Origin: Macrostomum hystrix
Taxonomy: Eukaryota > Animalia > Platyhelminthes
DNA length: 64,000 bases
Assembly: GCA_950097015.1 (NCBI GenBank)
Contig: CATNEN010000001.1
Coordinates: 5,208,001-5,272,000, forward strand
Reading direction: 5' to 3'
In this document: positions 20,345 through 63,002 of the stretch, one piece after another
How the letters are laid out: each line of letters starts with the position of its first letter
Numbering within the stretch: the first letter of the stretch is position 1
The notes under the pieces: generated by a model
The model's input: the letters and a program-made list of their open reading frames with translations, nothing else
Told to the model about the DNA's origin: nothing
Database searches by the model: none
Program-made: the position numbers and the translations under genes

Positions 20345-20406
<62 letters not shown>

Positions 20407-35400: not shown

Positions 35401-38400
35401 GGGTGGAGTACGTCAAATGCGACGCTGAAGGACACTACGGCGTTGGCTACATGAATCTGCACGGACTCACAGGAATCCCGGTGGATATGATGATTCTCAA
35501 AATCCCCGGGAAGACTCTCAATCCTTACGACGGAGTTCACGAGCGCGAGGATGGCCATGTTGTTGAACTGAAGCTCTCAGGCAAGAGCGATCTGTTTCCG
35601 AAAAACATGCCCATCAATGTTGTGATGCGATCGGGCGCTATTCAACAGATTAAACTCAATATGCGCCACGAGATAACAGACCTGCAGTTGGAGATTCAGC
35701 GCATGGGATACAACGATCCGACTAAGTACAATCTGTATCACAAAGGCAAGCTCATACCAAAGGAGGCCACTTTGCTTGACGCTGAGATTGAGGCCAACTC
35801 TTATGTCCACGTGTGCGCCCACTACTATCCCATAGATGTAGTTAATGTTCGCGGCTACAAGAAAGTCATCAAGGTGCAGTGCACGGGGAAGGTGTCTCGT
35901 CTTTACCTAAAAGCAAACGAGGCCTTTCCGCCGCAGTACGGCAAGGCGAAATATATTTTCGCCGGCGATGACATTTTCAGAGCCAAGCGGTTAGACAAGC
36001 TAGAACTGTGGCCAAGCTGTGCTATCTTCCAGGAGACAATAGACCCCTACATTGTAGTCCAGGTGGTGTACAAAAATGACACCATAATTCTGGAAATGAA
36101 TTCGGACGATTTCACTTTCCTGGTGCGAGAGCGCTTTACACTCTGGGAGCTGCCAACTTCAACCTTGGATAGTCTGGAGCAGCTGCTTGTATGGTTGGTG
36201 ACGAAGCCGAGCTACACAGAGTCGAGACCAACAGCCAAGCCAATCAAGATCACGGAGGAGCTGATTGATAATCCGTCGGTGAAACCGGAGATCGACTGGC
36301 ACAAGGTGCGACCACCGCCGCCAACAGAGAAACCGTTTCGACTCGGTCGAAAGTCGCCCAGAGCGGGCGTGGCAATCTGCTTGCCACCAGTGAGGCTGTA
36401 CGAAGTAGCGCGGCCGCAGCAGCTCGAGAAGGATGAGGGACTTCAGACACTACTAAAAGAAGAGAAACGCCGAGTTGGAGCAAGCAAGCGATAAATGTTT
36501 GCGAACTATAAACAAAGCGCTCTAAATACTCGTATATTGCATGATGCTATCTGCGAAAACTTTGAACTAAAATACTTTTGCTGACATTTAATCAACATTT
36601 TAGCTCCTCAATCTGTATAGACAATAACTTTAAGGTTGACCCACTGACGTTTGTACAGTTAAAGGACTTTGAGACTTTGTACTTTAAGATTGTTCATTCT
36701 ACTCATATATAATTTTTTCTCGAGCTACTGGCGCTAAATATGGATTTTATAACTTTAAATATAAAAGTAATGTACAGTAGAACGTGCTATTTGAAGCCAG
36801 TTTTTTACATGGAAACAAAATAAAAATATAATACATCGATAGATTTACCTCCAGCTTCTCGCCCTTCCGATACCAATCAACGTGGGCTCTGGGATCATTA
36901 ACGGAGCACTCCAAATTGAGATCCTTGCCGCGAATCACGTGAACAGTGTCCGAGAGTCGCTGGTTGAAAGTGTAGGTCTTCTGCGACTCTTCGACATCCA
37001 GGGCTGCCGTAGTAGATATGTCGTCGTTGATTTTGCAGGTGTAAAGACCGGCGTCCTCCATGCCAACCTTCTTGATCTCGAGAATGTACTCGCAGCCGTT
37101 GCTGTCAAAGTTTCGGTTAGAAAATTTATAAGTTTGATAATTTTAAATGAACTGTTATAAAGAAAAATAAAATAATAGGATTACTTAATAAAGTTGTACT
37201 TCGGACCCTGAAAGATCTCAAGCTTATTTTTTAGCCATCGAAATCTTTGGGACGGCTTTGAGAAGACGCAGCGAAAGTGAGCTGTTGGTGCTCCCTCATT
37301 AACTTGGACGTCCTCCATGTCCTGCTTGAACTCCTCTTTTTCCTGCAAATTGTGAAATTTTCAGATTGAAGCATTTTGTAAGTCGAGCTACTGTCCATTA
37401 CTGCCTAAGAGAGTCCTCTTGGGACATACCACGCGCTTTTTCTCGGCAGACTTCAACTGCGGAAAGCCAGGAATTAGTTCGGCTAGGGACTGTCGTCTAT
37501 TCATCTGCGACATTCGCCTGGCTTCCAGTATGTTTTGCATCTCCTGAATCTCTTCAGCCATCTTGTCGCGAATTCCGGCGCCTGAAGCGCGTCGCTGCGG
37601 ACTGGCTGATTCGTCCTGTCGTGAGATTAGAATGATACATGAGATCGTATAATCTATAGAGTGCGGGGCACATGGTAAATGGTTCATGGTGCATTGTAAC
37701 ATGGTACCTTATAATAATAATAATAATTATAATTGCAGGAGGGCTGCGGGCAATGGCACATCATTTGGTGACACTAGACCCGCAGCCAGCGAGGAGGCAA
37801 TTCTGCTCATTTCGCTGACGCACACACGCTCACAGATACCGTACGCAGGCATACGCTCACACAGGTGTGTATATCTGCCCTGACTTTCTCATCGTCAGGC
37901 AGTGTACATTTCACTGTACCTTGGAGGTTGGCCCTCAAGGGCGTAAATTGCACGACAAGCCCCCAAGTCTTCTCTACGCGGCTGCGCCCCAAGTAAATGT
38001 GGCCTCGCCGTGGAATCTAACTTAGGGACCCTGGTGCGAGAGGCAAATGCATTAACCGCTCTGCCACCGACCCTCTAACATGGTACCTTACACATGGTTC
38101 ATGGTACATAATGCATGATACATGATACATGACTCATGGCACATTGTACATAATAGATTGAACATAATAGCATCTCAGAATTTATCTTGGTAGATCACAC
38201 GAATGAAGACTTGAATTAAAATAAACTTACGATGCTTTTTTATTTATTTTTCCTGATAAACATGCTTATTTTTAGGTTTTTTATATTTTCAAAAGCATTT
38301 TCTTTGTTTTGAAGGCCATAGAGCCATAAATCCTGAACAGTACCTCACTGTCTCCATCCAAAGCAGTCGTGGGTGGCTGCAGAGTTGAAGTTCGGCGAGG

Positions 38401-46425: not shown

Positions 46426-47649
46426 TATTTAATGCTAGATGATGTACGACAAAGAACAATATATTTTATAAAGTTCACTTCCATCAGCCAATAAAAAACT
46501 CCATTCGAACTCAGAATGTCAAAGCCTTTAAGTTTCGCTGCAAACGAACTGAACCGTTGTTGAACCACTGACTCTGGCGCATTCATTCCATTACCTTTTT
46601 TGGTAACAACCGCATGTACTCTCCAGCCAGAAGGTCTCTGTACAACCGCTGCAAACTGCATGGCTCCAGCTCCATGTCTCATTTTGCACCCTTATGCCTC
46701 TCTACCGTTTCTGTGTCCCAGCCTATCCCTCCTCCTAAATACTCCCCTCCGTCTATTTAATTTGTGTGAGTGCGCGCATGTGTGTGCGCGTGTGCGTCTG
46801 TACACGTTTGGTCCTGGACGGATAACAGCTAGGCAAGAGGAGGATAGAAGGATACAAGCCTTTCTTGTCCAACCTCTTCCACGCGATACAAACGTGAGGC
46901 GCATGCTTGTTCTCACCCAAGTCCTGCTGGCTTGGTCGGCCCCCCCTGGCCCGGGGGCGGAGGGGTGGCTGGTCAGATTGTTTGGCTGTGGGGTGGCTGC
47001 CGTGGAGGTCAGTGTCAGGGTGGTGGGACTCGCCGGATAGTTAGTCGCAGCACGTGAGAGCGCACGCACCAAAATATTATTGTGAAGATTTTGGTGTACA
47101 CATACACTAACGCGAATGCCCGCATGACTGTACACTGGAGTCCCTTCCTCATTTTTCTCTCTCTCTAGCGTCACTGTCGCTTTCTTACCCGGGGCTCACT
47201 CCGCCCTACAACCCCCTGCTGCTGACGTGTGTTCACAGTATGCGCACAGCGTCTTGCGCTCTCTCTCAGCCCCCATCCGCTCCATTTTAGTAACCCCAGT
47301 AACCGACAGACATTGTGCATGGCTGCATGCACCTTCTCTTTTCTTTCCCTCTTTTATCTTCGTCTTCTTTTATTTCAAACCAGATTCCGCTGTCAAGCCC
47401 GAAGAACGGCTGCACCCCTCTGGCCTGAAACGGGTATTACACTCTAGCACCGAAATTCTGGATTTTATTTCAGATTCTCAGTCTTAAGCGAAAGACAATG
47501 AGAAAGCTAACAAGGTGGAAGAGTGTATTTAGTGTCTAAATGACAGTTTCTAGGCAGAATTGTCTTTACAATACCAAAAAACTTGTAGGATTCAATGCAA
47601 ATTCGAAAATTTAGAAACAATTAAAGGTATGACCTCCCAGTTGCCCTAC

Positions 47650-49060
47650 AATGACCATGATCAGCCTCCGACGTAGTCAGTCAGCGTCACTGTACGCGCT
47701 GTGGCCCTTAACTCTCTCTTTCTCTTTCTGTTTTCTTCCTACCCGCATTAGCTGTGTCTCGCCTATCCTCACCCGCAACTCCCTGAAACACATCCGTCGA
47801 AGCCTCCGCGGCGCACCGCCCTCAGAGCCCTGCCCCCCGACCCCAGGAGTCCAGAGGACAGTTTGGGGGTGGGCGTTGGGCCAAACGGACACAAGTCTGC
47901 GCTCGACGCAAAAGGAAGGAAGTTCAGCGCGCTGTGCCGCGCAATGCATGCAGATAGACTGTACTTTGCTCGGATCAGAAAGCAGCGGCGTGCGTTTTTC
48001 TCTCCATTTGAACGCAGCCAGCCAGATTCAAGGCCAGGGACAAACGCGAGCCCCGCGGAGCCCAAGCCTGTTTCGTGTTCTTCGTGTACGCGCGCTAATA
48101 CAAAAGCTGCATCAGCGGGGCTCAGATAGGGTGGGGAGGGTTAGAGGCAGCCAGCCCATTAGCGCTCCTCAAGGCCTCTCCTTTACCGGCTTGGAAGATT
48201 GGTGGGGTGGGGTCAGGCCAACCAACTGCCTTTTTATAAGTTTATTACTCTGGGTGCGTATGCGCGCACACAGTCCGTGCCAATGCCTTCCACTAACACC
48301 GTTCCGCGCAAGGGGGCCAACCAACCCAATATCGTGCTCTCCTCTCTCTCCTTTTCTCTCGCCGACCCCAACCCACCCCCGCCTGCACCACAGGCCAAGC
48401 CTGCAGCCGCCCTCACTGTTTCCCCCGCAAGTCATGCCCAAAATTTGCAGCAAACTTCACTCTCCCCCCTCCGCTGTCCGGCCTAAAAAAGGCATTGCTC
48501 ACCAACCCCCTTGCGCACATGCGCGCCAAGTCAGTCACAACAGCTTGTGTGTGTGATCGAGTGAGCGGGCCTTGTTCTAAAGGGTGCCTTCTCCCTCTCA
48601 GTTTGCGCCCCCTCACAGGCGTACCAAACAACTACCCAAGCCCTCCCTCTGTCTCTCTACCTTCCTCTCCCCAGAACTCCGCCTGTGTCCTCTCCCTCCC
48701 CTCTCCGGCTGTCGCTGCCCCCACCCAGCCGCACACGCACGCGCCCACCTTCTCCTCCTTCAAGCTGGTCGCCGCCCTCAAAGCCTGTCTCTCCTCCACC
48801 GTCCCCTTTCCAAAGTCGAGCTCCACTCTTCCAAACTATATCCCTCTTTAAAAAGGCGACTGCACCCTCAGCTCTGGCGCGCACCAAGAGGGAGAGACCG
48901 GCGCAGAGTTTGACATGCCCCTGAAGAATTTGTGAAGGCAAGAAAAGTTGCTGCACAACTGGAAGGATCTCGCATCGCCTCAGCACCCATGCTCCGATAT
49001 TTTTGAAAGTTTGTCGACTACCAAACTTACCTTCTTCTGATTTCAACTGACGTCGTTCAA
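47650..49060. promoter_or_regulatory. GC/CpG-rich region upstream of TET (probable promoter / 5' UTR)
   Basis: Markedly higher GC and CpG content than the flanks, with CT-rich tracts and no credible protein, immediately 5' of the TET ATG. Function is inferred only from position. Confidence 0.4.
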
Positions 49061-49072
49061 AATCAGCAAAAA

Positions 49073-51829
49073 ATGGAATCGAACGAAATCCAGCTTGAGT
49101 CTAATTTATCAACGGCAATTTCTCCGCCAACGTCATCTGCGGCACCGCCTCAGCCCAACGTGCCACCTGATGAGAAAGATTCAGACCAGCTGAAACATTT
49201 CGATCAGCAGCGGGAGCTTGAAGAGAAAGAGCCCGACCAAGAACATGAGACTTGCGCCTGTGTACCTGCTGGTACATCGGCCGCGATCGATTCTCAGCCG
49301 CAAGCTTATCAACACCTCGGAGCTGCTCCGAGCGTACAAGATTTGCGCCGATGCCTGGAGACACGCCTGTGCCTGCCGCCTGTAGCGCTGCGCATTGAAA
49401 CTGTCACACCTAGCGAGAGAGAGGGCGCTACAGAGCGTGGCTGCCCCGCTGCTAAGTGGGTGCTGCGTCGAAGCGGCGAGCAGGAAAAGTTTCTGGCTCT
49501 TGTTCGCGTCCGTCCCGGCCATGCTTGCGCCACAGCCGTGATTGTGGTGGCTCTGGTAAGCTGGGAGGGCATCCCGAGGACCTTGGCAGACCAGACGTTT
49601 GACTACCTAGCAAGTGAGCTGCCGCAACGAGGCATGACGATCGAGCGTCGTTGCGCTGCTAATGAAAGTCGCACCTGCGGCTGCCAGGGCTTCGATGAGG
49701 CCACCTGCGGTGCCTCTTACAGCTTTGGCTGTTCATGGAGCATGTTCCACAATGCCTGCAAATTCGCTCGGACTCGAGAGCAGGCGCGAAAGTTTCGTTT
49801 GCGTTCGCCAGAAACTGAAACTGAGCTGGCCGCAAAACTGAACTGCCTGGCCGATGTTGCGGGCCGGGTGCTGGAGACCGCCGCTCCGGATGCATTTCAA
49901 GCACAGGTGCGCGATTCGATCCTCGCCACCGATTGTCGTTTGGGATGCGAGACGCCTCTCGAAAAGCGACCATTTAGCGGCGTCACAGCCTGTCTTGACT
50001 TCTGCATGCATGCGCACAAGGATTCCTTTGCCCTAGACGGAGGCTGTAACGTGGTAGTGACACTAGTCGACAGTCGATCATCAGACGAGCAACTCCACGT
50101 TCTTCCTGGTTACATACCCGCCAAGGTCGACGAGTTGGGCTCTGAGACCGGTCAAAGGGAGAGAATCTCGCGTGGCTTTATCCAATCTCTTCGCAACGTC
50201 AGCTTGGTTACTCGAGTTCGAGGCACACCGCTAGCTCCATGCGCCATTCGAAAGAAAGTGAAGAAAACGGCTCAGCAGCAACAGCAGCAAATTCAGGCGC
50301 AGCAGAAGCCGCAGCAGCTAGCTCAAAAACATCTTCAGCATCAGAAGTCGGGAAGGGCCGCAACAGCGAAGGAGGAACATTCCCCTGCAAGTATAGACAG
50401 CGGCTTTGAGTCAATTAAGAGCAATCGAAGCCCGGACAAGGATGAGCAGCAGCACCAGAGCCCTCCAGTGGCTGCCCCGGCCGTATCTGTTAGCATTCTG
50501 CCACCCATTGCCTCGTGGTTCCGAAAGTCGGCTACACAGTGGATACCACCACAGCAGCAAATTCAAAGACAACATCCGATGCAGCATCAGCACGCTCACA
50601 TGATGCCTTTGGCGCCTCCATCTGCGCCTCCGACGCAACTGGGACAGCAACTTCTGCCGTCACCGCAGATGCCGCAGTCCGCAACTGGCTATCCTGATAC
50701 TAGAGGCGTCGGCAGCGAGAATCCGCTTCAGCAGCAGCACTTTGCTCAGCGCATGCAACAGCAGACAAACGGCAATCGACCTGATCCACGGGTGTCTTTC
50801 AATCCACAGGGCACTGGTGCAGAATTTACGCATCCGCATCCGCCTCCTCCACCATCTCAACCTTCGCCACAGCAGCAGCTGCAGCATCATCAGCACAGCT
50901 ATCAACAAACGGGTGCAAGACCAATGCCCCAGTATCCGCCGCAACAGCATCAGTACCCAGGTTACATGCCAAGATATCCCGCGGACCATCAAGTCCATCA
51001 GTATCCGGGCGGCTATCCTGGCAATCACTGGCGACCACAGCATCCAAATGGAAGCTACTACAGCCAGCACCAGCAGTTCAGGGGTCAGCTACCACCCGCC
51101 TATCGGCAATATCCATATCCAGCTTATCCACAGCAGCCAATGCAGCATCAGGCATATGATATCGATTATTCAAATCATCAGAAATACTATTCTCAGAACC
51201 CGCATCAGCAGCAACACCAGCAGCCTTACTCGCAATATTATCCACAATATCCTGGACAGAATCAGAACCAGCAGTCTCAAAGTCAGCTGCAGCTTCAACA
51301 GCAGCCTAACAACAACAATTATCCGAATCAACCTTTGATGGAGCAGTCACAGCAACATCAGCAACTGCTGCAGCAGCTGCAGCAAAAACAGCAGCAGCAG
51401 CCGCTACCTCAACAGCAGCAACAACAAAAACAACAGCCCTCTACGCAGACTACGAAGCGACGAAGCAGCGAATCAATGTTTTCGGAGACAAGCAAAGGCT
51501 CCTCAGGCGATCGTGAATTTTTATCAGACTGCGCTGAACTATTTAGAGACGAGCGCATGGGAGGCCTGGCCATCGCTCTTACTCACGGCTCCGTCCTGAT
51601 CGAAGCTGCCAAGCACGACAGTCACGCGTCGACTTCATTGCGCCGACCGAACAGGAACCATCCGACCAACCTCAGCCTGGTGTTCTTCCAGCACAAGAGC
51701 CTGAGCTACGCGCACCACGGCTACAATGAGTACGCTGAAAAGATGCGCCTGCTGCGGCTGCGCAGAGCTGAGAACACGGAGGCCAAGTCCGACGCCGCTG
51801 CCAGACCAGTGAAGCTTGAGGACAAATGA
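49073..51829 (+). CDS. TET: TET-family methylcytosine dioxygenase homolog (intronless ORF, 918 aa)
   Basis: Cys-rich region (YQHLGAAP, GCPAAKWVLRR, GHAC, RRCAANESRTCGCQG, CGASYSFGCSWSM). Split DSBH domain: RPFSGVTACLDFCMHAHKD and DEQLHVLP, then a Q/P-rich insert, then GGLAIALTHGSVLIEAAKHDSHAST...PNRNHPTNLSLVFFQHKSL. No CXXC domain seen. Confidence 0.95.
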   Translation: MESNEIQLESNLSTAISPPTSSAAPPQPNVPPDEKDSDQLKHFDQQRELEEKEPDQEHETCACVPAGTSAAIDSQPQAYQHLGAAPSVQDLRRCLETRLCLPPVALRIETVTPSEREGATERGCPAAKWVLRRSGEQEKFLALVRVRPGHACATAVIVVALVSWEGIPRTLADQTFDYLASELPQRGMTIERRCAANESRTCGCQGFDEATCGASYSFGCSWSMFHNACKFARTREQARKFRLRSPETETELAAKLNCLADVAGRVLETAAPDAFQAQVRDSILATDCRLGCETPLEKRPFSGVTACLDFCMHAHKDSFALDGGCNVVVTLVDSRSSDEQLHVLPGYIPAKVDELGSETGQRERISRGFIQSLRNVSLVTRVRGTPLAPCAIRKKVKKTAQQQQQQIQAQQKPQQLAQKHLQHQKSGRAATAKEEHSPASIDSGFESIKSNRSPDKDEQQHQSPPVAAPAVSVSILPPIASWFRKSATQWIPPQQQIQRQHPMQHQHAHMMPLAPPSAPPTQLGQQLLPSPQMPQSATGYPDTRGVGSENPLQQQHFAQRMQQQTNGNRPDPRVSFNPQGTGAEFTHPHPPPPPSQPSPQQQLQHHQHSYQQTGARPMPQYPPQQHQYPGYMPRYPADHQVHQYPGGYPGNHWRPQHPNGSYYSQHQQFRGQLPPAYRQYPYPAYPQQPMQHQAYDIDYSNHQKYYSQNPHQQQHQQPYSQYYPQYPGQNQNQQSQSQLQLQQQPNNNNYPNQPLMEQSQQHQQLLQQLQQKQQQQPLPQQQQQQKQQPSTQTTKRRSSESMFSETSKGSSGDREFLSDCAELFRDERMGGLAIALTHGSVLIEAAKHDSHASTSLRRPNRNHPTNLSLVFFQHKSLSYAHHGYNEYAEKMRLLRLRRAENTEAKSDAAARPVKLEDK

Positions 51830-54296
51830 GACTTGAAGGCTGAAGCCAATTCAAAGCCAATTTGACCTGTCTACTTCAAGTTTATTAGAAGAAAAAGAGT
51901 TTCGCCTCCAGTTTTTATTGTTCTATTTTGAATGATGTGCTTCTGTTAATAAAAAACGTGTAATGCAATCCCCTTTATAATACATGCAGTCTCTTTATCA
52001 TTGTATGAATTCCATTGTTCACCCACTTGATTCCCCTATTTATCTACCCAGAACCATTCTGTATAAGACTCGCAAATTCCTTTTTATGCTGTTGTTTTTC
52101 TGCTTATCTACAACTCATTCCCATGTTTCGACTCACAACGACTCGTGGCCTCGTGGCGAAAGTTTCATAATGTACTTTGATATTTTTAATTTTCTTTAAA
52201 TAATCATTAAGTTACTGGCAAAAATAGGAGTGGTGTGAGCGACTTTTGGATTAAAAAACGACCTAAGCGTTAAAATTTAGATATTAAAACAACTTGAAGC
52301 ATATTTATTTATTTTATAAATTTCTGAACATTCATTGTGATGCGTATTGATTTTTTGCTATGAACTGTTTATTTTTTCTGACAATGCCGAGCTGCTTCCC
52401 CCAGAAAACAAATTCAGCGTCTCCTCCTCTGGTGACAGGAATTTATTGTATGCTTCACCATGCATCTTTGCTCAGCTATTTATAAATTAAAAGTTTATTT
52501 TTTTCTACCTAATTTGCCTCTGTTGGCTGTAAAAGTTTTCAATTTTTCGTCCGCTATTTTTGCACCGCGCTGATCACAGTCAGTGCCCGTAAAAACACAA
52601 GATTTTGGCCATCGATACTCATTGTTTTCTTTAACTTTCTGCCAGCTCAAAGCCACACGTTGCAATATTATTGTCGTTGTGCGAATATTGTGCTTCACTA
52701 TTGTTAAACAGTGTCTGATTATCGTACAGATTAGGTCAGTCGTATTTTTTTTCACCTGTTGATTCGCATCTGAATAGATTTTTTGCTCTTGTTTGTTTTA
52801 CTTTTCGTTCACAATAATTGTTTGTGAGCTTGCTGCACAATGCTCCTAACAATTAATTTAAGTTCCATCGTCATATTTTCAAAATTTCATTGTCTCTTTG
52901 TTCTTGTAGAATGTATTGGCTCCTTCTAATAAGATTTCCCAGTGGCCACTAATTTTTTATTAACCCTTCAAGCGACTTCTAAAACTCATCGATTCTATTT
53001 GATCAGAGTTTTGGTCTGGGCAGGACTGTTATTGCAACATTCCTTTCCTCCATTTGGTCAGTAATTTTAGTGGAAAGCTTTTTATCGTACGAGTCGTCGA
53101 AAATCGCGCAATACTCACACTAAATATTGTTTTGATTCGGTCATACCTCGTTTTTGAAGCGCTGAAATGTTTTTTATTTAGGCTGAAGCAGAAAAACCGA
53201 AACTAAAGTTTCCCACCCTTGTGTTATTTTCTTCAAGAAATCTTATTTTGCGTTTTTGTCGCTTCGAATAGGCAATAACCATAGGATAAGTTGCTTGGAA
53301 TGCAGAGTAAAAAGAAACTTGTAATTTGTTTTTGTTATGTATAAAATCACATCTAATAGTAAACTGTGAGTTTCTCGCAATAAAATAGATGAAAATCAGC
53401 GGATCGCTTGTCAAGATGATTGGCATAGACACGACTGTTTTATTTATCGAGAAAAGCACCTATAAAACATGCCACACTACTGAAATGAGTAGCGATCTTT
53501 TCAAATTTAAATATGATTACGCGATAATTCATGAATTACACATTCAAATCCAGCCGATGGACTTCTACGCAAAAAATCTAATCGTACGATGCTATAGATA
53601 CTGAAGTCCATGGTCAGCCAGGCTGACCTGATAGATACTTCCTGGCCAGCCAATAGTCTATGGCACCAACTGCCCAGTCGCAACTTTTAATTCGAAACTT
53701 GGTGATGACGTCACTGCTCATTGCTGAATTCTTTACAAGACGGCCTGCTTTGGCTAAAGTGTCGTTATAAAAACATGCTCAAATATTCAACAACTTGAGA
53801 CTTGTTGAGTATGACAGCTTAGAAACTTGAGGCTTGTAAAGCATAGTTTTTCGTTTCACATTATTGCTTTAGGCAACCAGTTAGGAGTTGAGACCAAGGG
53901 CGAATAAATTTCTTGGCAGAAGTTTTGCGTTAAAATTTTGCGGAATATTTCATAAATATTCTTCTGATCAAGACGTGAATATATTTATTTGAGTTTGCCG
54001 CATGAATTGTCTGTTGTTAATATTTTATATTTTTATAGTTTTCTAACGCATAAGTCAACGAAATGCTTTTACATTTCCGCTTTTCAGTCATCATTACAAG
54101 CTTTTTGCCGGAGTTTAAAGCTTAAAGTTAGCTCAAATAAGCGAAAACTATATCAAGAAAGCGAATAATTTGCTATATAAATCAGAAGAAAACAGACATG
54201 ATAGCAAGTGGGGCAGATAATTTACTGAACTCATAAATATTTTTCTTAGAATCAGTTTATACTGCTTAGTGCGATAGGGTCATTAATATTTCAAGA

Positions 54297-55940
54297 CTAA
54301 ACACTCGCACATCTTACATTATCCATCGACGTCAGCGAAAAATTATTAACAAGATCTTGAACTGTACTAGGAGCCGTCGTTGACTTTCGAGAAACTGCTG
54401 CTTCAACTAGCCGTCTCCTGAATGCGTCAAATACTACGACTGCTAGGTTATGCAGCAGCTCCAGCAGCTCCAGCAGTGACAGAAGCGACATACCTAAAAA
54501 TAGTCCCAGTAGGCCACCAATGTCCGCGATCAACGAGTTGAACCTGTACGCTAGAGAGAGCAGAACCTCCTGGCTCTTGCGCGACTTGGCTACCAACTCC
54601 AGTTGCAGAAGCGACCTCTGGGCCTCCTCTGTTGTGCTATTGTGGACCAGTTGTACAAGACTTGGACTATCTAGACTAGGGCTGAATTCCAAGACAGTTG
54701 GTCGCAAAAATTCTTCCCACACCCTAGTGGAAGGCCAGCCGCTTGCCGAGTGCTTGTAGCTGTACTGCCTGTTTCGACAGGGTGCTTCTCGATCGCACTT
54801 CTCCCTAGCTGCATCCTGCACGGATGCCAACAAGATCATTAGGTCGGAGTTGATTATAAATGATGTATTGATTTCGGATAGATTATAGCACGATGGAAGA
54901 GTCCTATACTCCCAGGGAATCAGAATTTGATACAGAGTACAATTGAACCTCTCCAGTGATAGGCGAGAAATCTCTCGGTACCAGCAAACAGCTTGGTTGT
55001 ACTCAAGTGTCTTCATTCCACCAGTGTACGGGTCAACAAATTGAGCAGTGATTTCGCGATTTTTCGGCACACAATGCTCAGGAAAGTCAGTTTCAATGTA
55101 TACTCTATCTTGCATCTCGATCTCAATTAGGTGCTTCTGAGCTGGGCCAACCACCACTTGGGCATCCCATTCGCTGGGATGCTTTCCCTTCGGCGTGAGA
55201 AAAATTCTATAGCCCTCGGAGACTGTGAAGTCGGTACCGTAGTTGAAGTCCCAATCGATGGGTTGCAGGTTTAAAGTCTGACCGTACAGTTCGTGAACGT
55301 CCAGCTCTGAAGCTGTCTCATCAGATTTTGACAATTGAGAATCCAGAAACAGTACTACCTGGACAACATTGCTTGGATTCTGCAAAGCTGAACGATCTTG
55401 CGGTGTGAGGTTAATGGAGAAACAATTAACGAATGCGGGAATGTGAACAATCGAAGCATTATTGTCGTCTTTCCCTGCTATGTAGGCGTATGTGATAGAG
55501 GACAGTCGATGTCCCATGCTGTCGGATAGAAAGCTGTACGGCAGACTGTTGACTAGCCTGATTGCGTAAGAGTCTATAGCAACCTGCGCATCTTCAATAC
55601 TGAAATTTGAAACCGCTTTTCTAGCTAGGCCTCTGTAATGCTTCAGTAGGCTGGCGTCCTCCGTGCTCAGTGAGACAGACAGACTGCCAGATATCGGCTT
55701 CTCATTACAGAAGTACAAATCAGGAAACTCGAAATCCAATTCGTTCTCCGTAAACGTAGCTGCGATTTCTCTACTAGCATACCTGTTGCAGGCGTCATAG
55801 ATACGCGAAACACAATAGCCAAGCGATAATAAAAAGGCAAGCAGCCAGGCTGTTTTCACGGCTGCAGTACGATTACTTGCTAGTCGACCGACCGCATGGA
55901 CTGTAGTCTCGTTCGTGCAGTTCAGTAGAGACGCATGCAT
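54297..55940 (-). CDS. DEG/ENaC (ASIC-like) ion channel subunit, copy 1, intronless
   Basis: First ATG at 55940 (the ORF track starts at an upstream TTG). ETTVHAV, TM1, FEFPDLYFCN, Cys-rich thumb, WPS, TM2 DIGGLLGLFLGMSLLSLLE. Confidence 0.92.
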   Translation of the reverse strand: MHASLLNCTNETTVHAVGRLASNRTAAVKTAWLLAFLLSLGYCVSRIYDACNRYASREIAATFTENELDFEFPDLYFCNEKPISGSLSVSLSTEDASLLKHYRGLARKAVSNFSIEDAQVAIDSYAIRLVNSLPYSFLSDSMGHRLSSITYAYIAGKDDNNASIVHIPAFVNCFSINLTPQDRSALQNPSNVVQVVLFLDSQLSKSDETASELDVHELYGQTLNLQPIDWDFNYGTDFTVSEGYRIFLTPKGKHPSEWDAQVVVGPAQKHLIEIEMQDRVYIETDFPEHCVPKNREITAQFVDPYTGGMKTLEYNQAVCWYREISRLSLERFNCTLYQILIPWEYRTLPSCYNLSEINTSFIINSDLMILLASVQDAAREKCDREAPCRNRQYSYKHSASGWPSTRVWEEFLRPTVLEFSPSLDSPSLVQLVHNSTTEEAQRSLLQLELVAKSRKSQEVLLSLAYRFNSLIADIGGLLGLFLGMSLLSLLELLELLHNLAVVVFDAFRRRLVEAAVSRKSTTAPSTVQDLVNNFSLTSMDNVRCASV

Positions 55941-56647
55941 CTTCGCTGCTAGCAGCAGAAAGTGATTAAAGCGGCAGAGAAGCAAGCAGCGATGAGAATC
56001 TTATCAGATACAATGCCTGCAGTCCCGTGTCCCATAGGTGCTTATCTAGACTATAGCCAATATTTGCCACCACTGATTTCAGAGTTGCACAGCAAACAAT
56101 GCAAATCATCCTTAGACTTCAGGACAGTTGTATGCTTCAGAACTAAGGACTGTAATCAGCAGTGTTTGACGATTTTGCACTCGAAAAAATCGATAAAAAT
56201 CTTTGCTTTTGATTTCTTTCAGCATGTCGCATTACCACTATTATGAGTATCATTTTACATAATTTTAAAAAGGACACAAGACAATTTACTCGTAATACAA
56301 AGAGGAGTAAATCAATTATTTCGGTATCTCTAAATATCAAGAATAAAATATAAAACTCCGGATGAAACAGAGTAACCAATTATTGTCTGCTTTACGAATA
56401 ACTACAAAATCGCATTGAAGTCAACCAACAAGCATAGGACTATTGATTGTCAAAAATAGGAATTGATATTTGCAAGAGTGGCTGTGGGCGAATCCAGCGA
56501 GAAACGATTCTGCCACTGACTCCTGAATACATAAGCACTCAATATGATACTGCGCTGGCAAATCTCACACAGGTGTACATCTGATCTGACTTCTCAGGGA
56601 CGTTGGTGCAAGAGGCAGCAAATTTGATAACTAAAATGTGTAATTTT

Positions 56648-58294
56648 CTACTTTGGGACTTCCTGTGACACTTTGCTCGGAATACTTGCAACCGTGCTCG
56701 CACTGATGGCAGAGCCTTCCATCTCCATCGTCTTGCTGCCGTTGCTGACGACATTGTTTCTTTCCCGTAGCCGCCGCATGGTGTCCTCGGCACAGCCGTG
56801 CAGCAGCTCCAGCACCTCCAGCAGGGACAGCAGCGACATGCCCAGGAACAGGCCGAGCAGACCGCCGACGTCTGCGATCAGCGAGTTGAAGCTGTAGGCA
56901 AGAGACAACTGGCTCTCCGGACTCATTCGCTCGGCTGCCGAGAGTGACAGCTGAACCATCGAAGCCCTGGCCGCTTCCGTGCTCTTGTTGTACACCAGGT
57001 ACTTGATGCCAGGTATCTCCGCACCATCCGCTCCTATTAAGCTATTTTTCCTCAGGTAGCTGCGAAGAAACTGCTCCCAAGATCGATCAGAAGGCCAGCT
57101 GCTTGAGGAGTACTCATTTGTGTAGGACCTGCTTCGACAGGGCACTTTCCGCTCGCACACTCTCCGTCCCAAATCCAGAATCGCTGCTCTCTTCGAGGTG
57201 AACTCTGCATTCAGCACATAGCTGCCGGAGTATTCAGAAATGTTGAAGCACGAGGGGAGATGCCGGTAGTCCCATGTCAGAGGAGTATGCCAGACGCTAC
57301 AGTTGAATTGTTCCTGCGATAAACGAGCCACCTCAGTGTGGAAGCAAGCCGCGTGGCTGTACTTGTACCTGAGCTTGCCACCTGTGTACGGGTCGAAGTA
57401 GTACGCCATCGCCTCGCTGCTACCATCGCACTGACCAGCAAAGTCGACCTCATTGTACACAATGTCCTGCATCTTTATCACGACTCTGTGTTTCTGCCCA
57501 GGCCCAATAACAAGTTGACTGTTGAATGCGCTTAGGCGCTCGCCTCTGGGAGTGAGGAACACTCGAAACCCGCTGGATATGGTATAGTCCATGCCGTAGT
57601 CAAGGTCCCAGTCAATTGGCTTGAAGTCAACGATAGTATCTGAGTACTGCCGGTTGTCCTCCGTGCTGTTGTCCACTGGTCTAGGTACGGGAGGATCCAG
57701 GAACAGGACGATTTGAATAGTGTTCGTAGGATTCTGTATTGCCGTCCTGTCCTGGGTTGTCAAGTTCAGACTGAAGCAGTTTATATAGAATGGGTCGTGG
57801 AAAATTGTGCCCGTCCATGAATCGGTGCTCTCTGTGTAATAAGTAAGTATTGACGATTGCCGATGGCCCAATTTGTCCGACAGAAACCTGTACGGCAGGC
57901 TGTTCGCTAAGTAAATGCCGTAGTTTTCCAGTGCCATATTGGGGCTACTTATGCCCATAGCTGACACCTTGTTATCAACTAGTCTCTTGTACTGGCTGAG
58001 CAAGCTTGAGTCCTCTGCGCTCAGTGTGACAGAAGTGCTTCCAGAGATGGGATTCTCATTGCAGATGTACACATCCGGGAATTCGAACTGCAGCGCATTG
58101 GCGCGCACGGTTGTGGCCACCTCTTTGCTGACAAATCTCCTGTAGGTGTCGGACACTCGCTGAGTGCAGTAAGAGATTGACATCAGCACTGCTAGCAGCC
58201 AGATCAGCTTGACATATAGACGGCGCTCACCTGCCAGGTGTGCCAACCCGTGCACCGTGGTCTCGGCCAAGTATTGATTAACAGTCGATTGCAT
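56648..58294 (-). CDS. DEG/ENaC ion channel subunit, copy 2, intronless
   Basis: ETTVHGL (HG motif), TM1, FEFPDVYICNEN, WPS, TM2 ADVGGLLGLFLGMSLLSLLE. Confidence 0.94.
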   Translation of the reverse strand: MQSTVNQYLAETTVHGLAHLAGERRLYVKLIWLLAVLMSISYCTQRVSDTYRRFVSKEVATTVRANALQFEFPDVYICNENPISGSTSVTLSAEDSSLLSQYKRLVDNKVSAMGISSPNMALENYGIYLANSLPYRFLSDKLGHRQSSILTYYTESTDSWTGTIFHDPFYINCFSLNLTTQDRTAIQNPTNTIQIVLFLDPPVPRPVDNSTEDNRQYSDTIVDFKPIDWDLDYGMDYTISSGFRVFLTPRGERLSAFNSQLVIGPGQKHRVVIKMQDIVYNEVDFAGQCDGSSEAMAYYFDPYTGGKLRYKYSHAACFHTEVARLSQEQFNCSVWHTPLTWDYRHLPSCFNISEYSGSYVLNAEFTSKRAAILDLGRRVCERKVPCRSRSYTNEYSSSSWPSDRSWEQFLRSYLRKNSLIGADGAEIPGIKYLVYNKSTEAARASMVQLSLSAAERMSPESQLSLAYSFNSLIADVGGLLGLFLGMSLLSLLEVLELLHGCAEDTMRRLRERNNVVSNGSKTMEMEGSAISASTVASIPSKVSQEVPK

Positions 58295-61310: not shown

Positions 61311-63002
61311 TTATATCGTTGAGTCAAACGTCAGCGAATTCGATGACGACTTTGCTGTGACATCTTCGACTTCACTAGGACAGTCAGGGGCTTCAGACGC
61401 TGTCCCAAACGATGCGATTGCGTTGGCTTTACTGCTTCTACCGGTATTGTCGCTACGATGATCGCGTCGCCTTCTAGATCTTTCAATCATAACCTCGGCA
61501 CAGCCGTGCAGCAGCTCCAGCACCTCCAGTAGGGACAACAGCGACATGCCCAGGAACAGGCCGAGCAGACCCCCGACGTCTGCGATCAGCGAGTTGAAGC
61601 TGTAGGCAAGAGACAACTGGCTCTCCGGACTCATTCGCTCGGCTGCCGAGAGCGACAGCTGAACCATCGAAGCCCTGGCCGCTTCCGTGCTCTTGTTGTA
61701 CACCAGGTACTTGATGCCAGGTATCTCCACACCGTCCGCACCAATCAGGTTATTTTGAGCCAAATAATTTTTAAGAAACTGTTGCCACTCCCGGTCAGAA
61801 GGCCAACGACTAGAAGAGTACTCATTCGTGTAGGTTCTGCTCCGACAGGGCACTTTTTGCTCACACGCTCTTCGGCCTGAGTCTAGAATCGCTGCTCTCT
61901 TCGAGCTGAACTCTGCATTCAGCACATAGCTGCCAGAGTATTGGGAAATGTTGAAGCACGAGGGGAGAAGCCGGTACTCCCATGGCAGAGGCATTTTCCA
62001 AACAGTGCAATTAAACTGTTCATGTGATAGACGAGCCACTTCTCGGTGAAAGCAAGCCGCGTGGCTGTACTTGTACGTGAGCTTGCCGCCAGTGTACGGG
62101 TCGAAGTAGCTCACAGTAGCCTCGCTGCTACCATCGCAATGACCAGCAAAGTCGACCTCATTGTACACAATGTCCTGCATCTTTATCACGATTCTGTGCT
62201 GCTGGCCTGGACCAACAACCAACTGGCTGTGGAATGAGCCGGGCCGTTGACCCTTTGGCGTCAGAAAGACCCGAAATCCGTTCGATATCGTGAGGTCCAT
62301 GCCGTATTCCGGATCCCAGTCAATCGGTTTCATATCAACTGTCCCATCTGCAAATATGTGATTATCCTCCGTGCTGTTGTCAATCGGCTTCGGCACTGGT
62401 GGATCTAGGAAAAGAATAACTTGAATGATGTTGCTCGGATTCTGAGTAGAGATCCTATCCTTGCTGGTCAAGTTCAGACTGAAGCAGTTCAGAAAGAACG
62501 GATCATGATGAATGGCGCCCACCCAGTCTGTGTTGCCTTCAAGAAAAAAGAATATTATAGATGACAGCCGATGTCCCATTTTGTCCGACAGAAACCTGTA
62601 CGGCAGGCTATTGACCATGTAAATTCCATAGTTTTCCAGCGCTGAGTTCGGGTCAGATATGCCGAATGCCGATACAGTGCTATTAACTCGACGTCTGTAC
62701 TGACTGAGAAGGTTTGAGTCCTCTGCGCCAAGTGTGACAGAATAACTTCCCGAGATAGCGTTCTCATTGCAGATGTACACGTCCGGGAACTCGAATTCCA
62801 CAGCGTTTGCTCGCACGGTTGTGGCCACCTCCTTGCTGACAAATCTGCGGTAGGCATCGGACACGCGCAGGGTGCAATAGGAAAATGAAGCCAGCACCGC
62901 CATCAGCCAGATCAGCTTGATGTAGGACCTGCGCTCGCCTGTGAAGTGTACCAGACCATGCACTGTAGTCTCGGTCAGGTACTGGTTCACCGCTATGAAC
63001 AT
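61311..63002 (-). CDS. DEG/ENaC ion channel subunit, copy 3, intronless
   Basis: ETTVHGL, FEFPDVYICNEN, WPS and a TM2 identical to copy 2. Close paralog of 56648-58294. Confidence 0.94.
   Translation of the reverse strand: MFIAVNQYLTETTVHGLVHFTGERRSYIKLIWLMAVLASFSYCTLRVSDAYRRFVSKEVATTVRANAVEFEFPDVYICNENAISGSYSVTLGAEDSNLLSQYRRRVNSTVSAFGISDPNSALENYGIYMVNSLPYRFLSDKMGHRLSSIIFFFLEGNTDWVGAIHHDPFFLNCFSLNLTSKDRISTQNPSNIIQVILFLDPPVPKPIDNSTEDNHIFADGTVDMKPIDWDPEYGMDLTISNGFRVFLTPKGQRPGSFHSQLVVGPGQQHRIVIKMQDIVYNEVDFAGHCDGSSEATVSYFDPYTGGKLTYKYSHAACFHREVARLSHEQFNCTVWKMPLPWEYRLLPSCFNISQYSGSYVLNAEFSSKRAAILDSGRRACEQKVPCRSRTYTNEYSSSRWPSDREWQQFLKNYLAQNNLIGADGVEIPGIKYLVYNKSTEAARASMVQLSLSAAERMSPESQLSLAYSFNSLIADVGGLLGLFLGMSLLSLLEVLELLHGCAEVMIERSRRRRDHRSDNTGRSSKANAIASFGTASEAPDCPSEVEDVTAKSSSNSLTFDSTI

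What the first reader, a model, noticed from the sequence alone, without database searches (positions are those of the whole stretch)
49073..51829. TET homolog that keeps the iron triad but has lost the 2-oxoglutarate-binding Arg and has a remodelled base pocket
Seen in sequence: HxD (CAC-AAG-GAT, 50015-50023) and the distal His (HDSHAST) are intact, as are the Zn-binding Cys/His residues. However, the metazoan TET motif RNHPTRISLVFYQH reads RNHPTNLSLVFFQH (AAC at 51668-51670), and HRDLHNM reads HKDSFAL. Established knowledge (human TET2 numbering, aligned by eye from memory): R1896 binds the 2-OG C5 carboxylate, N1387 H-bonds the flipped cytosine and Y1902 stacks on it. Here these are N, A and F. 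Inference: an intact 918-aa ORF with clustered changes at co-substrate and base-recognition sites could be a catalytically dead chromatin scaffold, or an enzyme with a different co-substrate or base. The precedent is algal CMD1, a TET homolog that uses ascorbate instead of 2-OG. That would imply an unrecognised DNA/RNA modification in this animal.
Basis: partly seen in the sequence, partly recalled or inferred. Interest (0 to 1): 0.85.

Follow-up and report, generated by a model that had tools for sequence, protein, structure and literature searches.

The report
Flatworm TET missing its 2-oxoglutarate arginine
A Macrostomum-type flatworm transcribes an intact TET (DNA-demethylation) gene that keeps its iron site. 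It has lost the arginine that holds the co-substrate 2-oxoglutarate and the asparagine that reads cytosine, and the genome has no normal TET although it keeps the DNA-methylating enzymes.

Summary
Window 49073-51829 (+) is an intact 918-aa ORF, called TET-a here. It matches human TET2 crystal chains at E 2e-109.

- **Kept:** H315-x-D317, H851, all Zn ligands, and the equivalents of R1261, S1284, H1416, S1898, T1372 and H1904.
- **Changed:** R1896→N866, N1387→A320, H1386→F319, Y1902→F872.
- **Rarity:** Arg1896 is present in all 147 nearest TET cluster representatives. Asn1387 is present in 180 of 181 other TETs.
- **Not an assembly error:** two independent runs each hold one gap-free, mismatch-free ~4 kb contig that ends at the same 3' position, with no cover of the flanks. 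I read this as an unspliced mRNA.
- **Conserved in the genus:** M. lignano orthologues share the changes, but carry Ser at 1896, so that site drifts.
- **No canonical TET:** the only other TET in the genome (TET-b, contig C38) has also lost two iron ligands. DNMT1, DNMT3, DNMT2, MBD and TDG-like genes are present.

Best reading (0.5): canonical 2OG-dependent 5mC oxidation is lost or crippled, and the protein works mainly by binding. Rivals are a weak, 5hmC-stalling enzyme (0.27) and a new co-substrate or base (0.18).

Two cautions apply. Y→F is benign, since NgTET1 and CMD1 have Phe there. And 16% of otherwise invariant core positions have changed in TET-a, so the active-site changes are not statistically clustered.

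The scan had already noted TET-b (s1-851803).

The parts
48649..52767 (+). Inferred unspliced transcript of TET-a. The 5' UTR is at least about 300-420 nt and holds two short uORFs (uATGs at 48915 and 48989). The 3' UTR is about 940 nt.
   Evidence: the X5 contig (3989 nt) covers 48778-52766 and the X6 contig (3886 nt) covers 48882-52767, with a further 260-nt contig at 48649-48908. All show 0 mismatches and 0 gaps. Bins 46930-48529 have no cover. uORFs. That these runs are RNA is inferred from the shared 3' end, the uncovered flanks, and 42-46 Mb of contigs against a 220 Mb genome.
49073..51829 (+). Coding sequence of TET-a, 918 aa plus stop, with no intron and no CXXC domain.
   Evidence: (Pfam Tet_JBP, E 4.4e-34). 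No CXXC match lies on this contig near the gene.
49253..49801 (+). Cys-rich domain (aa 61-243, TET2 1133-1312), with all Zn ligands and the DNA-contact loop SWSMFH. Here Y1294 is F225 and Y/F1295 is H226.
49802..50275 (+). First part of the double-stranded beta-helix (aa 244-401).
49646..49648 (+). R192, equivalent to TET2 R1261 (binds the 2OG C1 carboxylate). Kept.
   Evidence: residue role from PMC7854593.
50015..50023 (+). H315-K-D317, the HxD iron ligands. Kept.
50027..50032 (+). F319-A320 in place of TET2 H1386-N1387. The Asn/Asp that H-bonds N4 of the flipped cytosine is lost.
   Evidence: residue role.
50096..50098 (+). H342, equivalent to TET2 H1416. Kept.
50276..51493 (+). Low-complexity insert of 406 aa (Q 25%, P 15%) inside the DSBH, at the position of the TET2 insert.
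   Evidence: (pLDDT below 50).
50396..50413 (+). DSGFES inside SP.SIDSG[FI]ES[IV]KSN. This island is conserved in TET-a, TET-b and M. lignano only. It fits the DSGxxS pattern of a beta-TrCP phosphodegron (my recollection, untested).
50498..50530 (+). LPPIASWFRKS, a second conserved linker island specific to the Macrostomum TETs.
51494..51772 (+). Second part of the DSBH (aa 808-900).
51623..51625 (+). H851, the distal iron ligand (TET2 H1881). Kept.
51668..51676 (+). N866-L867-S868 in place of the R1896-I-S1898 (RxS) motif. The arginine that binds the C5 carboxylate is lost and the Ser is kept.
51686..51694 (+). F872-Q-H874 in place of Y1902-Q-H1904. The stacking aromatic is kept as Phe, and the His that reads N3 is kept.
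   Evidence: residue roles.

Best explanation
TET-a is the flatworm's orthologue of animal TET. It is a single-exon, transcribed gene without a CXXC domain, and it encodes the Cys-rich and DSBH core split by a 406-aa Q/P-rich insert.

Shown:
- The fold, the Zn sites, the DNA-contact loop, the Fe(II) triad and four of the five co-substrate contacts are intact.
- The arginine that salt-bridges the C5 carboxylate of 2-oxoglutarate is replaced by Asn.
- The Asn that H-bonds the 4-amino group of the flipped cytosine is replaced by Ala.
- The same lesions are found in M. lignano and in the older paralogue TET-b. The genome has no canonical TET.

Inferred:
- Ordinary 2OG-dependent oxidation of 5mC is lost or reduced to a trace.
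- The protein is kept mainly for what it binds: DNA through the Cys-rich/DSBH surface, and partners through the conserved linker motifs. This would parallel the catalysis-independent roles known for Drosophila and mouse TETs.
- The Arg was most likely lost once (AGR to AGC, Ser) before the a/b duplication. Afterwards position 1896/1897 drifted (N-L, S-M, S-I).
For: - Homology and fold.
- Residue census.
- R1261 and R1896 are the two strictly conserved co-substrate arginines, and N1387 reads N4 (PMC7854593).
- Human R1896M/S/G and H1881R/Q/N are classed as activity-destroying variants (PMC6625141).
- M. lignano P0121/P0122 read HKDTFAL and HPTSMSLVFFQH.
- Codons are AAC in a and AGC in b.
- Clade (b,(a,Mlig)) has 100/99 support on a long stem.
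- Purifying selection acts on the fold. Identity to M. lignano is 79-83% in the cores, 55% in the linker and 25-39% in the tails. Between a and b, dS is saturated and dN is 0.35-0.42.
- Transcribed with the codons confirmed.
- No other TET locus exists.
- No new Lys/Arg appears at any otherwise invariant core column except P1335R and K1438R. S1303R and K1304E in that list are MAFFT gap artefacts.
- Catalysis-independent TET functions are documented in PMC11068012, PMC6750732 and PMC6461695 (titles and abstracts).
Against: - The Fe triad and the equivalents of R1261, S1284, H1416, S1898, T1372, H1904 and V1900 are all retained in TET-a and in M. lignano. TET-b lost 5 of these 10 over the same period (Fisher P = 0.033). 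If a's pocket were as unconstrained as b's, the chance of 0 changes in 10 would be about 0.04. This hints that something in the pocket is still used.
- DNMT1, DNMT3, MBD and TDG-like genes are intact, so a substrate and a downstream pathway exist.
- Asn866 together with S868 and H342 might still hold a carboxylate weakly.
- No biochemical data exist.
- The AF2 model is of low confidence around the active site, so the pocket geometry was not examined.
Confidence: 0.5

Rival explanations
1. Hypomorphic but genuine Fe(II)/2OG 5mC dioxygenase. 2OG would be held by the R1261, S1284, H1416 and S1898 equivalents plus Asn866 or water, with a much higher Km. Without the Tyr1902 hydroxyl the enzyme would probably stall at 5hmC. 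It would be enough for the low 5mC level reported in M. lignano.
For: - Four of the five co-substrate contacts and the whole Fe triad are kept in two species.
- The remaining pocket is apparently constrained compared with TET-b.
- The DNA-contact and base-flipping loop is kept.
- DNMT1, DNMT3 and TDG-like genes are present.
- Low-level 5mC in M. lignano is reported in PMC11292947 and PMC10658182.
- The T1372-Y1902 scaffold is needed only for steps beyond 5hmC (PMC6244454).
Against: - R1896M/S/G are classed as activity-destroying in human TET2.
- No TET among the 147 nearest representatives does without this Arg.
- N1387 is also lost. The corresponding D350N change abolishes CMD1 activity.
- Position 1896 varies between N and S within the genus.
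Confidence: 0.27
2. Neofunctionalised oxygenase. The iron centre is kept, but the enlarged, uncharged C5 pocket (Asn/Ser for Arg) and the more hydrophobic base pocket (Phe-Ala for His-Asn) serve another co-substrate (another 2-oxoacid, or ascorbate as in CMD1) and/or another base (T, or an RNA base). This would produce a modification not yet described in animals.
For: - The Fe triad and most of the pocket are retained in TET-a and M. lignano, while TET-b decays.
- CMD1 shows that a TET homologue can drop 2OG for ascorbate once the Arg no longer reaches the site.
- Loss of the N4-reading Asn would remove the preference for cytosine (inference).
Against: - The residue at the former Arg site is not fixed (N here, S in M. 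lignano, S in b) and its neighbour varies too (L, M, I). That is not what a new specific contact looks like.
- There is no Trp or other bulky residue like CMD1 W358, and no special likeness to CMD1 (7cy8: Foldseek E 4.3).
- The active-site changes are no more frequent than the general divergence of this fast lineage (P = 0.35).
- There is no chemical evidence of any new base.
Confidence: 0.18
3. Artefact or decaying pseudogene: assembly or sequencing errors at the key codons, or a retro-copied dead gene on its way out.
For: The gene is intronless and fast-evolving.
Against: - The ORF is an open 2754 nt.
- Contigs from an independent study match with zero mismatches.
- M. lignano carries the same changes in three gene copies.
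- The cores are far better conserved than the linker and tails.
- Many neighbouring genes in this window are also single long ORFs, so being intronless is normal here.
Confidence: 0.02

Closest known systems
Human TET2 catalytic domain (PDB 4NM6, 5D9Y, 7NE3, 9HXV) and animal TETs in general
   Same: The Cys-rich + DSBH architecture has a low-complexity insert at the same place. Identity over the core is 45-50% (E 2e-109). All Zn ligands, the HxD...H triad and the R1261, S1284, H1416, S1898, T1372 and H1904 equivalents are kept, as is the SW.M DNA loop.
   Different: R1896 is Asn, N1387 is Ala, H1386 is Phe, Y1902 is Phe, Y1294 is Phe, L1420 is Gly and C1875 is Ala. There is no CXXC domain and the gene has a single exon. 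In all, 21 of 130 otherwise invariant core positions are changed.
TET-b, the paralogue in the same genome (G000:C38:11079252-11081606; L005:2253-4607; earlier scan note s1-851803)
   Same: It belongs to the same clade (100/99). It shares the loss of R1896 and N1387, the changes Y1902F, Y1294F, L1420 and C1875A, and the same two linker motifs.
   Different: TET-b has additionally D1384E, H1881R, S1284I, S1898R, V1900A and C1374A. Eight of its 13 active-site residues are changed (P = 0.0016). Its terminal branch is about 8 times longer than TET-a's, or about twice as long measured from the a/b split. Only a low-depth contig appears in run X6.
Chlamydomonas CMD1 (PDB 7CY8), an ascorbate-dependent TET homologue
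   Same: It is a TET/JBP-family DSBH with an HxD...H triad. No basic side chain reaches the C5-carboxylate site, and a Phe stacks under the base (PMC7854593).
   Different: It keeps an Asp (D350) that reads N4 and is essential. TET-a has Asn at the Arg position, Ala at the Asp/Asn position and no equivalent Trp. It is a bilaterian TET orthologue, not a CMD1 relative.
Catalysis-independent functions of canonical TETs (Drosophila Tet with PRC1; mouse Tet2 and Tet3)
   Same: The TET protein acts on gene expression without oxidising 5mC (PMC11068012, PMC6750732, PMC6461695).
   Different: Those proteins are still catalytically competent, and their dead versions are engineered. Here the lesion is natural, fixed and found in every TET copy of the genome.
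Disease alleles TET2 R1896M/S/G and H1881R/Q/N
   Same: The substitutions affect the same residues. M. lignano TET-a and TET-b carry R1896S, and TET-b carries H1881R.
   Different: The human alleles are somatic or germline loss-of-function alleles. In Macrostomum they are the fixed wild type under purifying selection on the rest of the fold.

Membership tests
TET/JBP family (Pfam PF12851), animal TET subfamily | Significant sequence match over the Cys-rich + DSBH core, split by an insert | tested here: met
   Pfam Tet_JBP E 4.4e-34, 117.5 bits against a cut-off of 34.9. TET2 crystal chains E 2e-109 in two stretches. Foldseek top hits are all TET2, E 2e-26, TMt 0.63-0.66.
TET/JBP family (Pfam PF12851), animal TET subfamily | Zn-binding Cys/His ligands of the Cys-rich domain | tested here: met
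   All 13 ligand positions checked are conserved in TET-a.
TET/JBP family (Pfam PF12851), animal TET subfamily | Groups with animal TETs in a tree | tested here: met
   The Macrostomum clade (b,(a,Mlig)) is sister to or within the bilaterian TETs on a long stem. The root is at the midpoint only.
Fe(II)/2-oxoglutarate-dependent dioxygenase (catalytically competent TET) | HxD...H facial triad | tested here: met
   H315, D317, H851.
Fe(II)/2-oxoglutarate-dependent dioxygenase (catalytically competent TET) | Basic residue binding the 2OG C5 carboxylate (R1896 of the RxS motif) | tested here: not met
   N866 (AAC, 51668-51670). It is Ser in M. lignano and in TET-b, and Arg in 147 of 147 nearest representatives.
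Fe(II)/2-oxoglutarate-dependent dioxygenase (catalytically competent TET) | Arg binding the 2OG C1 carboxylate (R1261), plus the S1284, H1416 and S1898 contacts | tested here: met
   R192, S215, H342, S868. S1284 and S1898 are listed among Fe/2OG-site disease variants. H1416's role is recalled and was not checked.
Fe(II)/2-oxoglutarate-dependent dioxygenase (catalytically competent TET) | Asn/Asp that H-bonds N4 of the flipped 5mC (N1387 / D234 / D350) | tested here: not met
   A320. It is Ala in M. lignano and Leu in TET-b, and Asn in 180 of 181 others.
Fe(II)/2-oxoglutarate-dependent dioxygenase (catalytically competent TET) | Aromatic residue stacking under the base, and His reading N3 | tested here: met
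   F872 (Phe also occurs in NgTET1 and CMD1) and H874.
Fe(II)/2-oxoglutarate-dependent dioxygenase (catalytically competent TET) | 2OG-dependent oxidation of 5mC in vitro or in vivo | not testable with these tools
   This needs biochemistry or nucleoside LC-MS.
CMD1-type ascorbate-dependent TET homologue | Trp (W358) filling the Arg site, essential Asp (D350) reading N4, and specific likeness to CMD1 | tested here: not met
   A320 stands at the Asp/Asn position. CMD1 structure 7cy8 scores only Foldseek E 4.3. TET-a nests with bilaterian TETs. Whether any residue fills the Arg site could not be examined because the model gives no coordinates.

The most novel reading that the evidence does not exclude
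TET-a is still an iron enzyme but no longer a 2-oxoglutarate enzyme. The uncharged, enlarged co-substrate pocket and the hydrophobic base pocket would let it use another co-substrate and/or another base. It would then write or erase a nucleic-acid modification not yet known in animals, in a regenerating flatworm that can be studied by RNAi.
Probability: 0.15. Interest if true: 0.9.

Novelty: new variant of a known kind. Interest (0 to 1): 0.6.

Why it matters
Macrostomum keeps DNMT1, DNMT3, MBD and TDG-like genes, and low-level 5mC is reported in M. lignano. Yet both TET copies in its genome lack the arginine that every other sampled TET uses to hold 2-oxoglutarate.

If TET-a is inactive, this animal methylates DNA without TET-driven demethylation. 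It would then offer a natural, fixed catalytic-dead TET for asking what TET proteins do apart from oxidation, which is a debated question in flies and mammals.

If TET-a is active, it redefines the minimal co-substrate site of the family, or it points to new chemistry. Either result can be tested in M. lignano, which has RNAi and transgenesis.

A practical point follows for database users. Automatic annotation names these proteins 'methylcytosine dioxygenase TET', so presence/absence surveys of the methylation toolkit would count this lineage as having a working eraser.

Tried and rejected
- **The look-up of encoding contigs was closed.** The M. lignano coding DNA could not be fetched, so no dN/dS between species could be computed. 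I used protein identity by region and Nei-Gojobori on the a/b paralogues instead. There dS is saturated.
- **Search for more Macrostomum sequences failed.**
  - The last homologous-protein search, with the C-terminal fragment, was blank. That says little.
  - The 50%-cluster library hides close relatives behind P0001, whose C-terminus is frameshifted.
- **The AF2 model was built but is weak.** Mean pLDDT is 52.6 and falls below 50 around the HxD, distal-His and NLS strands. No coordinates are returned, so the test 'does another Lys/Arg reach the 2OG site' could not be done structurally. As a proxy I looked for new basic residues at otherwise invariant columns and found none in the pocket.
- **An alignment artefact was corrected.** The automatic MAFFT alignment of all TETs reported S1303R. 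The HMMER and local-pair alignments show this is a gap-placement artefact and the real change is S1303T.
- **Retrogene origin rejected as an explanation for the single exon.** Neighbouring genes in the window are also long single ORFs.
- **A hidden canonical TET was rejected.** Pfam and human-TET2 searches of the whole 220 Mb assembly find only the two loci.
- **A linked CXXC gene (IDAX-like) was rejected.** The seven CXXC matches lie on other contigs.
- **Literature searches** found no paper that describes the active site of Macrostomum TETs. Wasik et al. 2015 is not held.
Full report
**1. The observation**

Window 49073-51829 (+) is an uninterrupted ORF of 918 aa. Pfam assigns it to Tet_JBP (E 4.4e-34). 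HMMER aligns it to the human TET2 crystal chains 4NM6, 5D9Y and 9HXV at E 2e-109 in two stretches: aa 61-401, and aa 808-894 on either side of an insert.

- CAC-AAG-GAT at 50015-50023.
- AAC at 51668-51670.

The alignment pairs three motifs:
- TET2 HAHRDLHNM with HAHKDSFAL.
- TET2 KRELHATT with KHDSHAST.
- TET2 RNHPTRISLVFYQH with RNHPTNLSLVFFQH.

A residue map built on the crystal construct (P0168) gives the following.
- **Iron ligands kept:** H315, D317, H851.
- **Zn ligands kept:** all 13 positions checked.
- **Co-substrate and base contacts kept:** R192 (R1261), S215 (S1284), H342 (H1416), S868 (S1898), T305 (T1372), H874 (H1904).
- **Changed:** N866 (R1896), A320 (N1387), F319 (H1386), F872 (Y1902), F225 (Y1294), G346 (L1420), A845 (C1875).

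**2. Is it more than chance or error?**

Rarity:
- Among 181 other TETs collected here, N1387 is Asn in 180. R1896 is Arg in 142 of about 148 that reach that far.
- I then searched 1.84 billion cluster representatives with the C-terminal domain. All 147 of the nearest representatives I read have Arg at 1896, and 146 have Tyr at 1902.

Independent sequence support:
- Runs X5 and X6 (organism C, study P2) each hold one contig of about 3.9-4.0 kb. These contigs are colinear with 48778/48882 to 52766/52767, with no mismatch and no gap.
- Both stop at the same 3' base, and the flanks 46930-48529 are uncovered.
- These runs total 42-46 Mb of contigs against a 220 Mb genome. I therefore read them as transcriptomes and the contig as an unspliced mRNA of about 4 kb. 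This is an inference, because the run type is not on record.
- Short contigs of run X1 (organism A) cover both key regions without changing the key codons. Run X2 (organism B) covers neither.

**3. Whose gene is it?**

The nearest protein is M. lignano BOX15_Mlig025520 (79% identity over the N-core). The next hits are only 46-51% identical, from beetles, bees and vertebrates. The window therefore comes from a Macrostomum-type flatworm.

The M. lignano cluster has three members. P0001 has a frameshifted C-terminus. P0121 and P0122 are complete and read HAHKDTFAL, KHDSHATT and RDHPTSMSLVFFQH. So M. lignano shares the loss of N1387 and R1896 and the Y-to-F change. At 1896/1897, however, it carries S-M where this species has N-L.

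**4. The rest of the genome**

- Pfam and human-TET2 searches of the whole assembly find only two TET loci: this one, and one on contig C38.
- The C38 gene (TET-b, 784 aa, L005:2253-4607) shares the same losses. It adds D1384E, H1881R, S1284I, S1898R, V1900A and C1374A.
- The scan had already reported TET-b as an iron-site-dead TET (note s1-851803). My reading of it agrees.
- A 163-nt contig in X6 with 17 differences from TET-a matches TET-b at every listed difference, so TET-b seems to be transcribed at low level.
- A tree gives (b,(a,M. lignano)) with 100/99 support on a long stem.
- Codons are AAC in a and AGC in b, with Ser in M. lignano. The simplest history is one Arg(AGR)-to-Ser change before the duplication, followed by Ser-to-Asn here.
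- The 5mC writers are present with intact motifs:
  - DNMT1 with an RFD domain, GGPPCQ and ENV.
  - DNMT3 with an ADD domain, SPCN and FENV.
  - DNMT2.
- MBD genes, UNG and at least three TDG-like loci are also present.
- Reviews report low 5mC and conserved DNMT1 and DNMT3 in M. lignano (PMC11292947, PMC10658182).
- No CXXC match lies near either TET.

**5. What the changed residues do**

According to the CMD1 structure paper (PMC7854593):
- R1261 and R1896 of TET2 (R224 and R289 of NgTET1) hold the C1 and C5 carboxylates of the 2OG analogue and are strictly conserved.
- An Asn or Asp (N1387, D234, D350) H-bonds N4 of the flipped 5mC.
- A Tyr or Phe stacks beneath the base (Y1902, F295, F416).
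- A His reads N3.

It follows that Y-to-F is compatible with stacking. What it removes is the T1372-Y1902 hydrogen bond required for oxidation beyond 5hmC (PMC6244454). R1896M/S/G and H1881R/Q/N are classed as activity-destroying human variants (PMC6625141). D350N abolishes CMD1 activity.

**6. Selection**

- Identity between TET-a and M. lignano is 79% and 83% in the two core segments, 55% in the insert and 25-39% in the tails.
- Between a and b, synonymous sites are saturated and dN is 0.35-0.42 in the cores. The fold is therefore maintained.
- Two linker islands are conserved in a, b and M. lignano but absent from the other TETs examined: SP.SIDSG[FI]ES[IV]KSN and LPPI[AS]SWFRKS. This points to partner-binding motifs. 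The first fits the DSGxxS degron pattern (my recollection, untested).

**7. How special is the active site within this fast lineage?**

- TET-a has changed 21 of 130 core columns that are at least 97% invariant elsewhere. TET-b has changed 27. S1303R and K1304E in that list are gap artefacts.
- I defined 13 active-site residues: three Fe ligands, five co-substrate contacts and five base contacts.
- TET-a has 3 of these changed, which is no excess (P = 0.35). TET-b has 8 changed (P = 0.0016).
- After setting aside the three shared changes, TET-a has changed 0 of 10 and TET-b 5 of 10 (Fisher P = 0.033).
- If TET-a's pocket were released as much as TET-b's, scaled to a's slower rate, 0 of 10 would have a probability of about 0.04.
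- This is weak evidence, from two species only, that what remains of TET-a's pocket is still used.

**8. Reading**

The facts agree on one point: the canonical 2OG site is broken in every TET of this genome, and the break is old and fixed. What the protein now does is inferred.
- **0.5: mainly a binding protein.** It would be a natural counterpart of the catalysis-independent TET functions shown in flies and mice. The drift at 1896/1897, the loss of the N4 reader and the disease-allele precedent support this.
- **0.27: a weak 2OG enzyme that probably stalls at 5hmC.**
- **0.18: a changed co-substrate or base.**
- **0.02: artefact or pseudogene.**

The retention of the triad and the other contacts (section 7) is the main argument for the two enzymatic readings. 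The variable residue at 866 argues against a new specific contact.

CMD1 is only a loose precedent. TET-a shows no special likeness to it.

**9. Limits**

- The AF2 model is poor around the active site and returns no coordinates. Foldseek only confirms TET2 as the sole significant structural match.
- The last protein search was blank.
- No paper found here discusses Macrostomum TET residues.

Noticed in passing
G000:C38:11079252-11081606 (L005:2253-4607, +): A second TET paralogue (TET-b, 784 aa). It carries HSHKE (D1384E), H1881R, S1284I, R1896S, S1898R and C1374A, and has a poly-Pro/poly-Gln insert. A 163-nt contig of run X6 matches it exactly at all listed differences, so it is probably transcribed at low level. 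The scan already reported it (s1-851803).
   Followed up: partly
window 50396-50413 and 50498-50530: Two short islands in the otherwise fast-evolving insert, SIDSG[FI]ES (DSGxxS, degron-like) and LPPI[AS]SWFRKS. They are conserved in TET-a, TET-b and M. lignano but absent from about 330 other TET sequences examined. They are candidate partner-binding or degradation motifs.
   Followed up: partly
protein P0001 (M. lignano PAA45902.1) against P0121/P0122: The cluster representative of the M. lignano TET has a frameshifted or mis-modelled C-terminus that lacks the second half of the DSBH. Searches that see only representatives therefore miss the Macrostomum C-terminal domain.
   Followed up: yes
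window 14877-26741 (-): Three long ORFs (536, 645 and 2074 aa) full of Ig I-set and fibronectin-III repeats, ending in a protein kinase domain. Together they look like one giant titin/twitchin-like muscle protein gene.
   Followed up: partly
window 54297-55985, 56648-58294, 61311-63002 (-): Three tandem DEG/ENaC (amiloride-sensitive sodium channel, PF00858) genes, each a single long ORF of about 550-560 aa. This is a local gene-family expansion, and it shows that intronless genes are common in this genome.
   Followed up: partly
window 34449-36494 (+): A 681-aa ORF with one ubiquitin-like domain (PF00240, E 1e-14) and no other Pfam match.
   Followed up: no
window 47651-48556 (+): A 301-aa Ser/Pro-rich ORF just upstream of the TET-a transcript. 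It has no Pfam match and no contig cover in X5 or X6, so it is probably not a gene.
   Followed up: partly
L013 (G000:C2:1663906-1667190), L014, L015, L016: At least three or four TDG-like loci (KEMKEGAEILL.KLK.YKPKIAVFNGKG; VMPSSSARCAQ). Several have exons that abut minisatellites translating as repeated TGLQNPFRSP or MGYLVLS units. This is an unusual multiplication of thymine-DNA glycosylase in a genome whose TETs look crippled.
   Followed up: partly
window 48915 and 48989: Two short upstream ORFs (MPLKNL, MLRYF) in the inferred 5' UTR of TET-a.
   Followed up: no
G000:C2:2150957-2160021 (-), C11:3925561-3928589 (-), C39:20070480-20070950 (+): DNMT1 (RFD domain, GGPPCQ, ENV), DNMT3 (ADD domain, SPCN, FENV) and DNMT2 (PPCQPFS, ENV) are all present with intact catalytic motifs. 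The RFD match of DNMT1 contains one in-frame TGA, which may be an intron boundary.
   Followed up: partly
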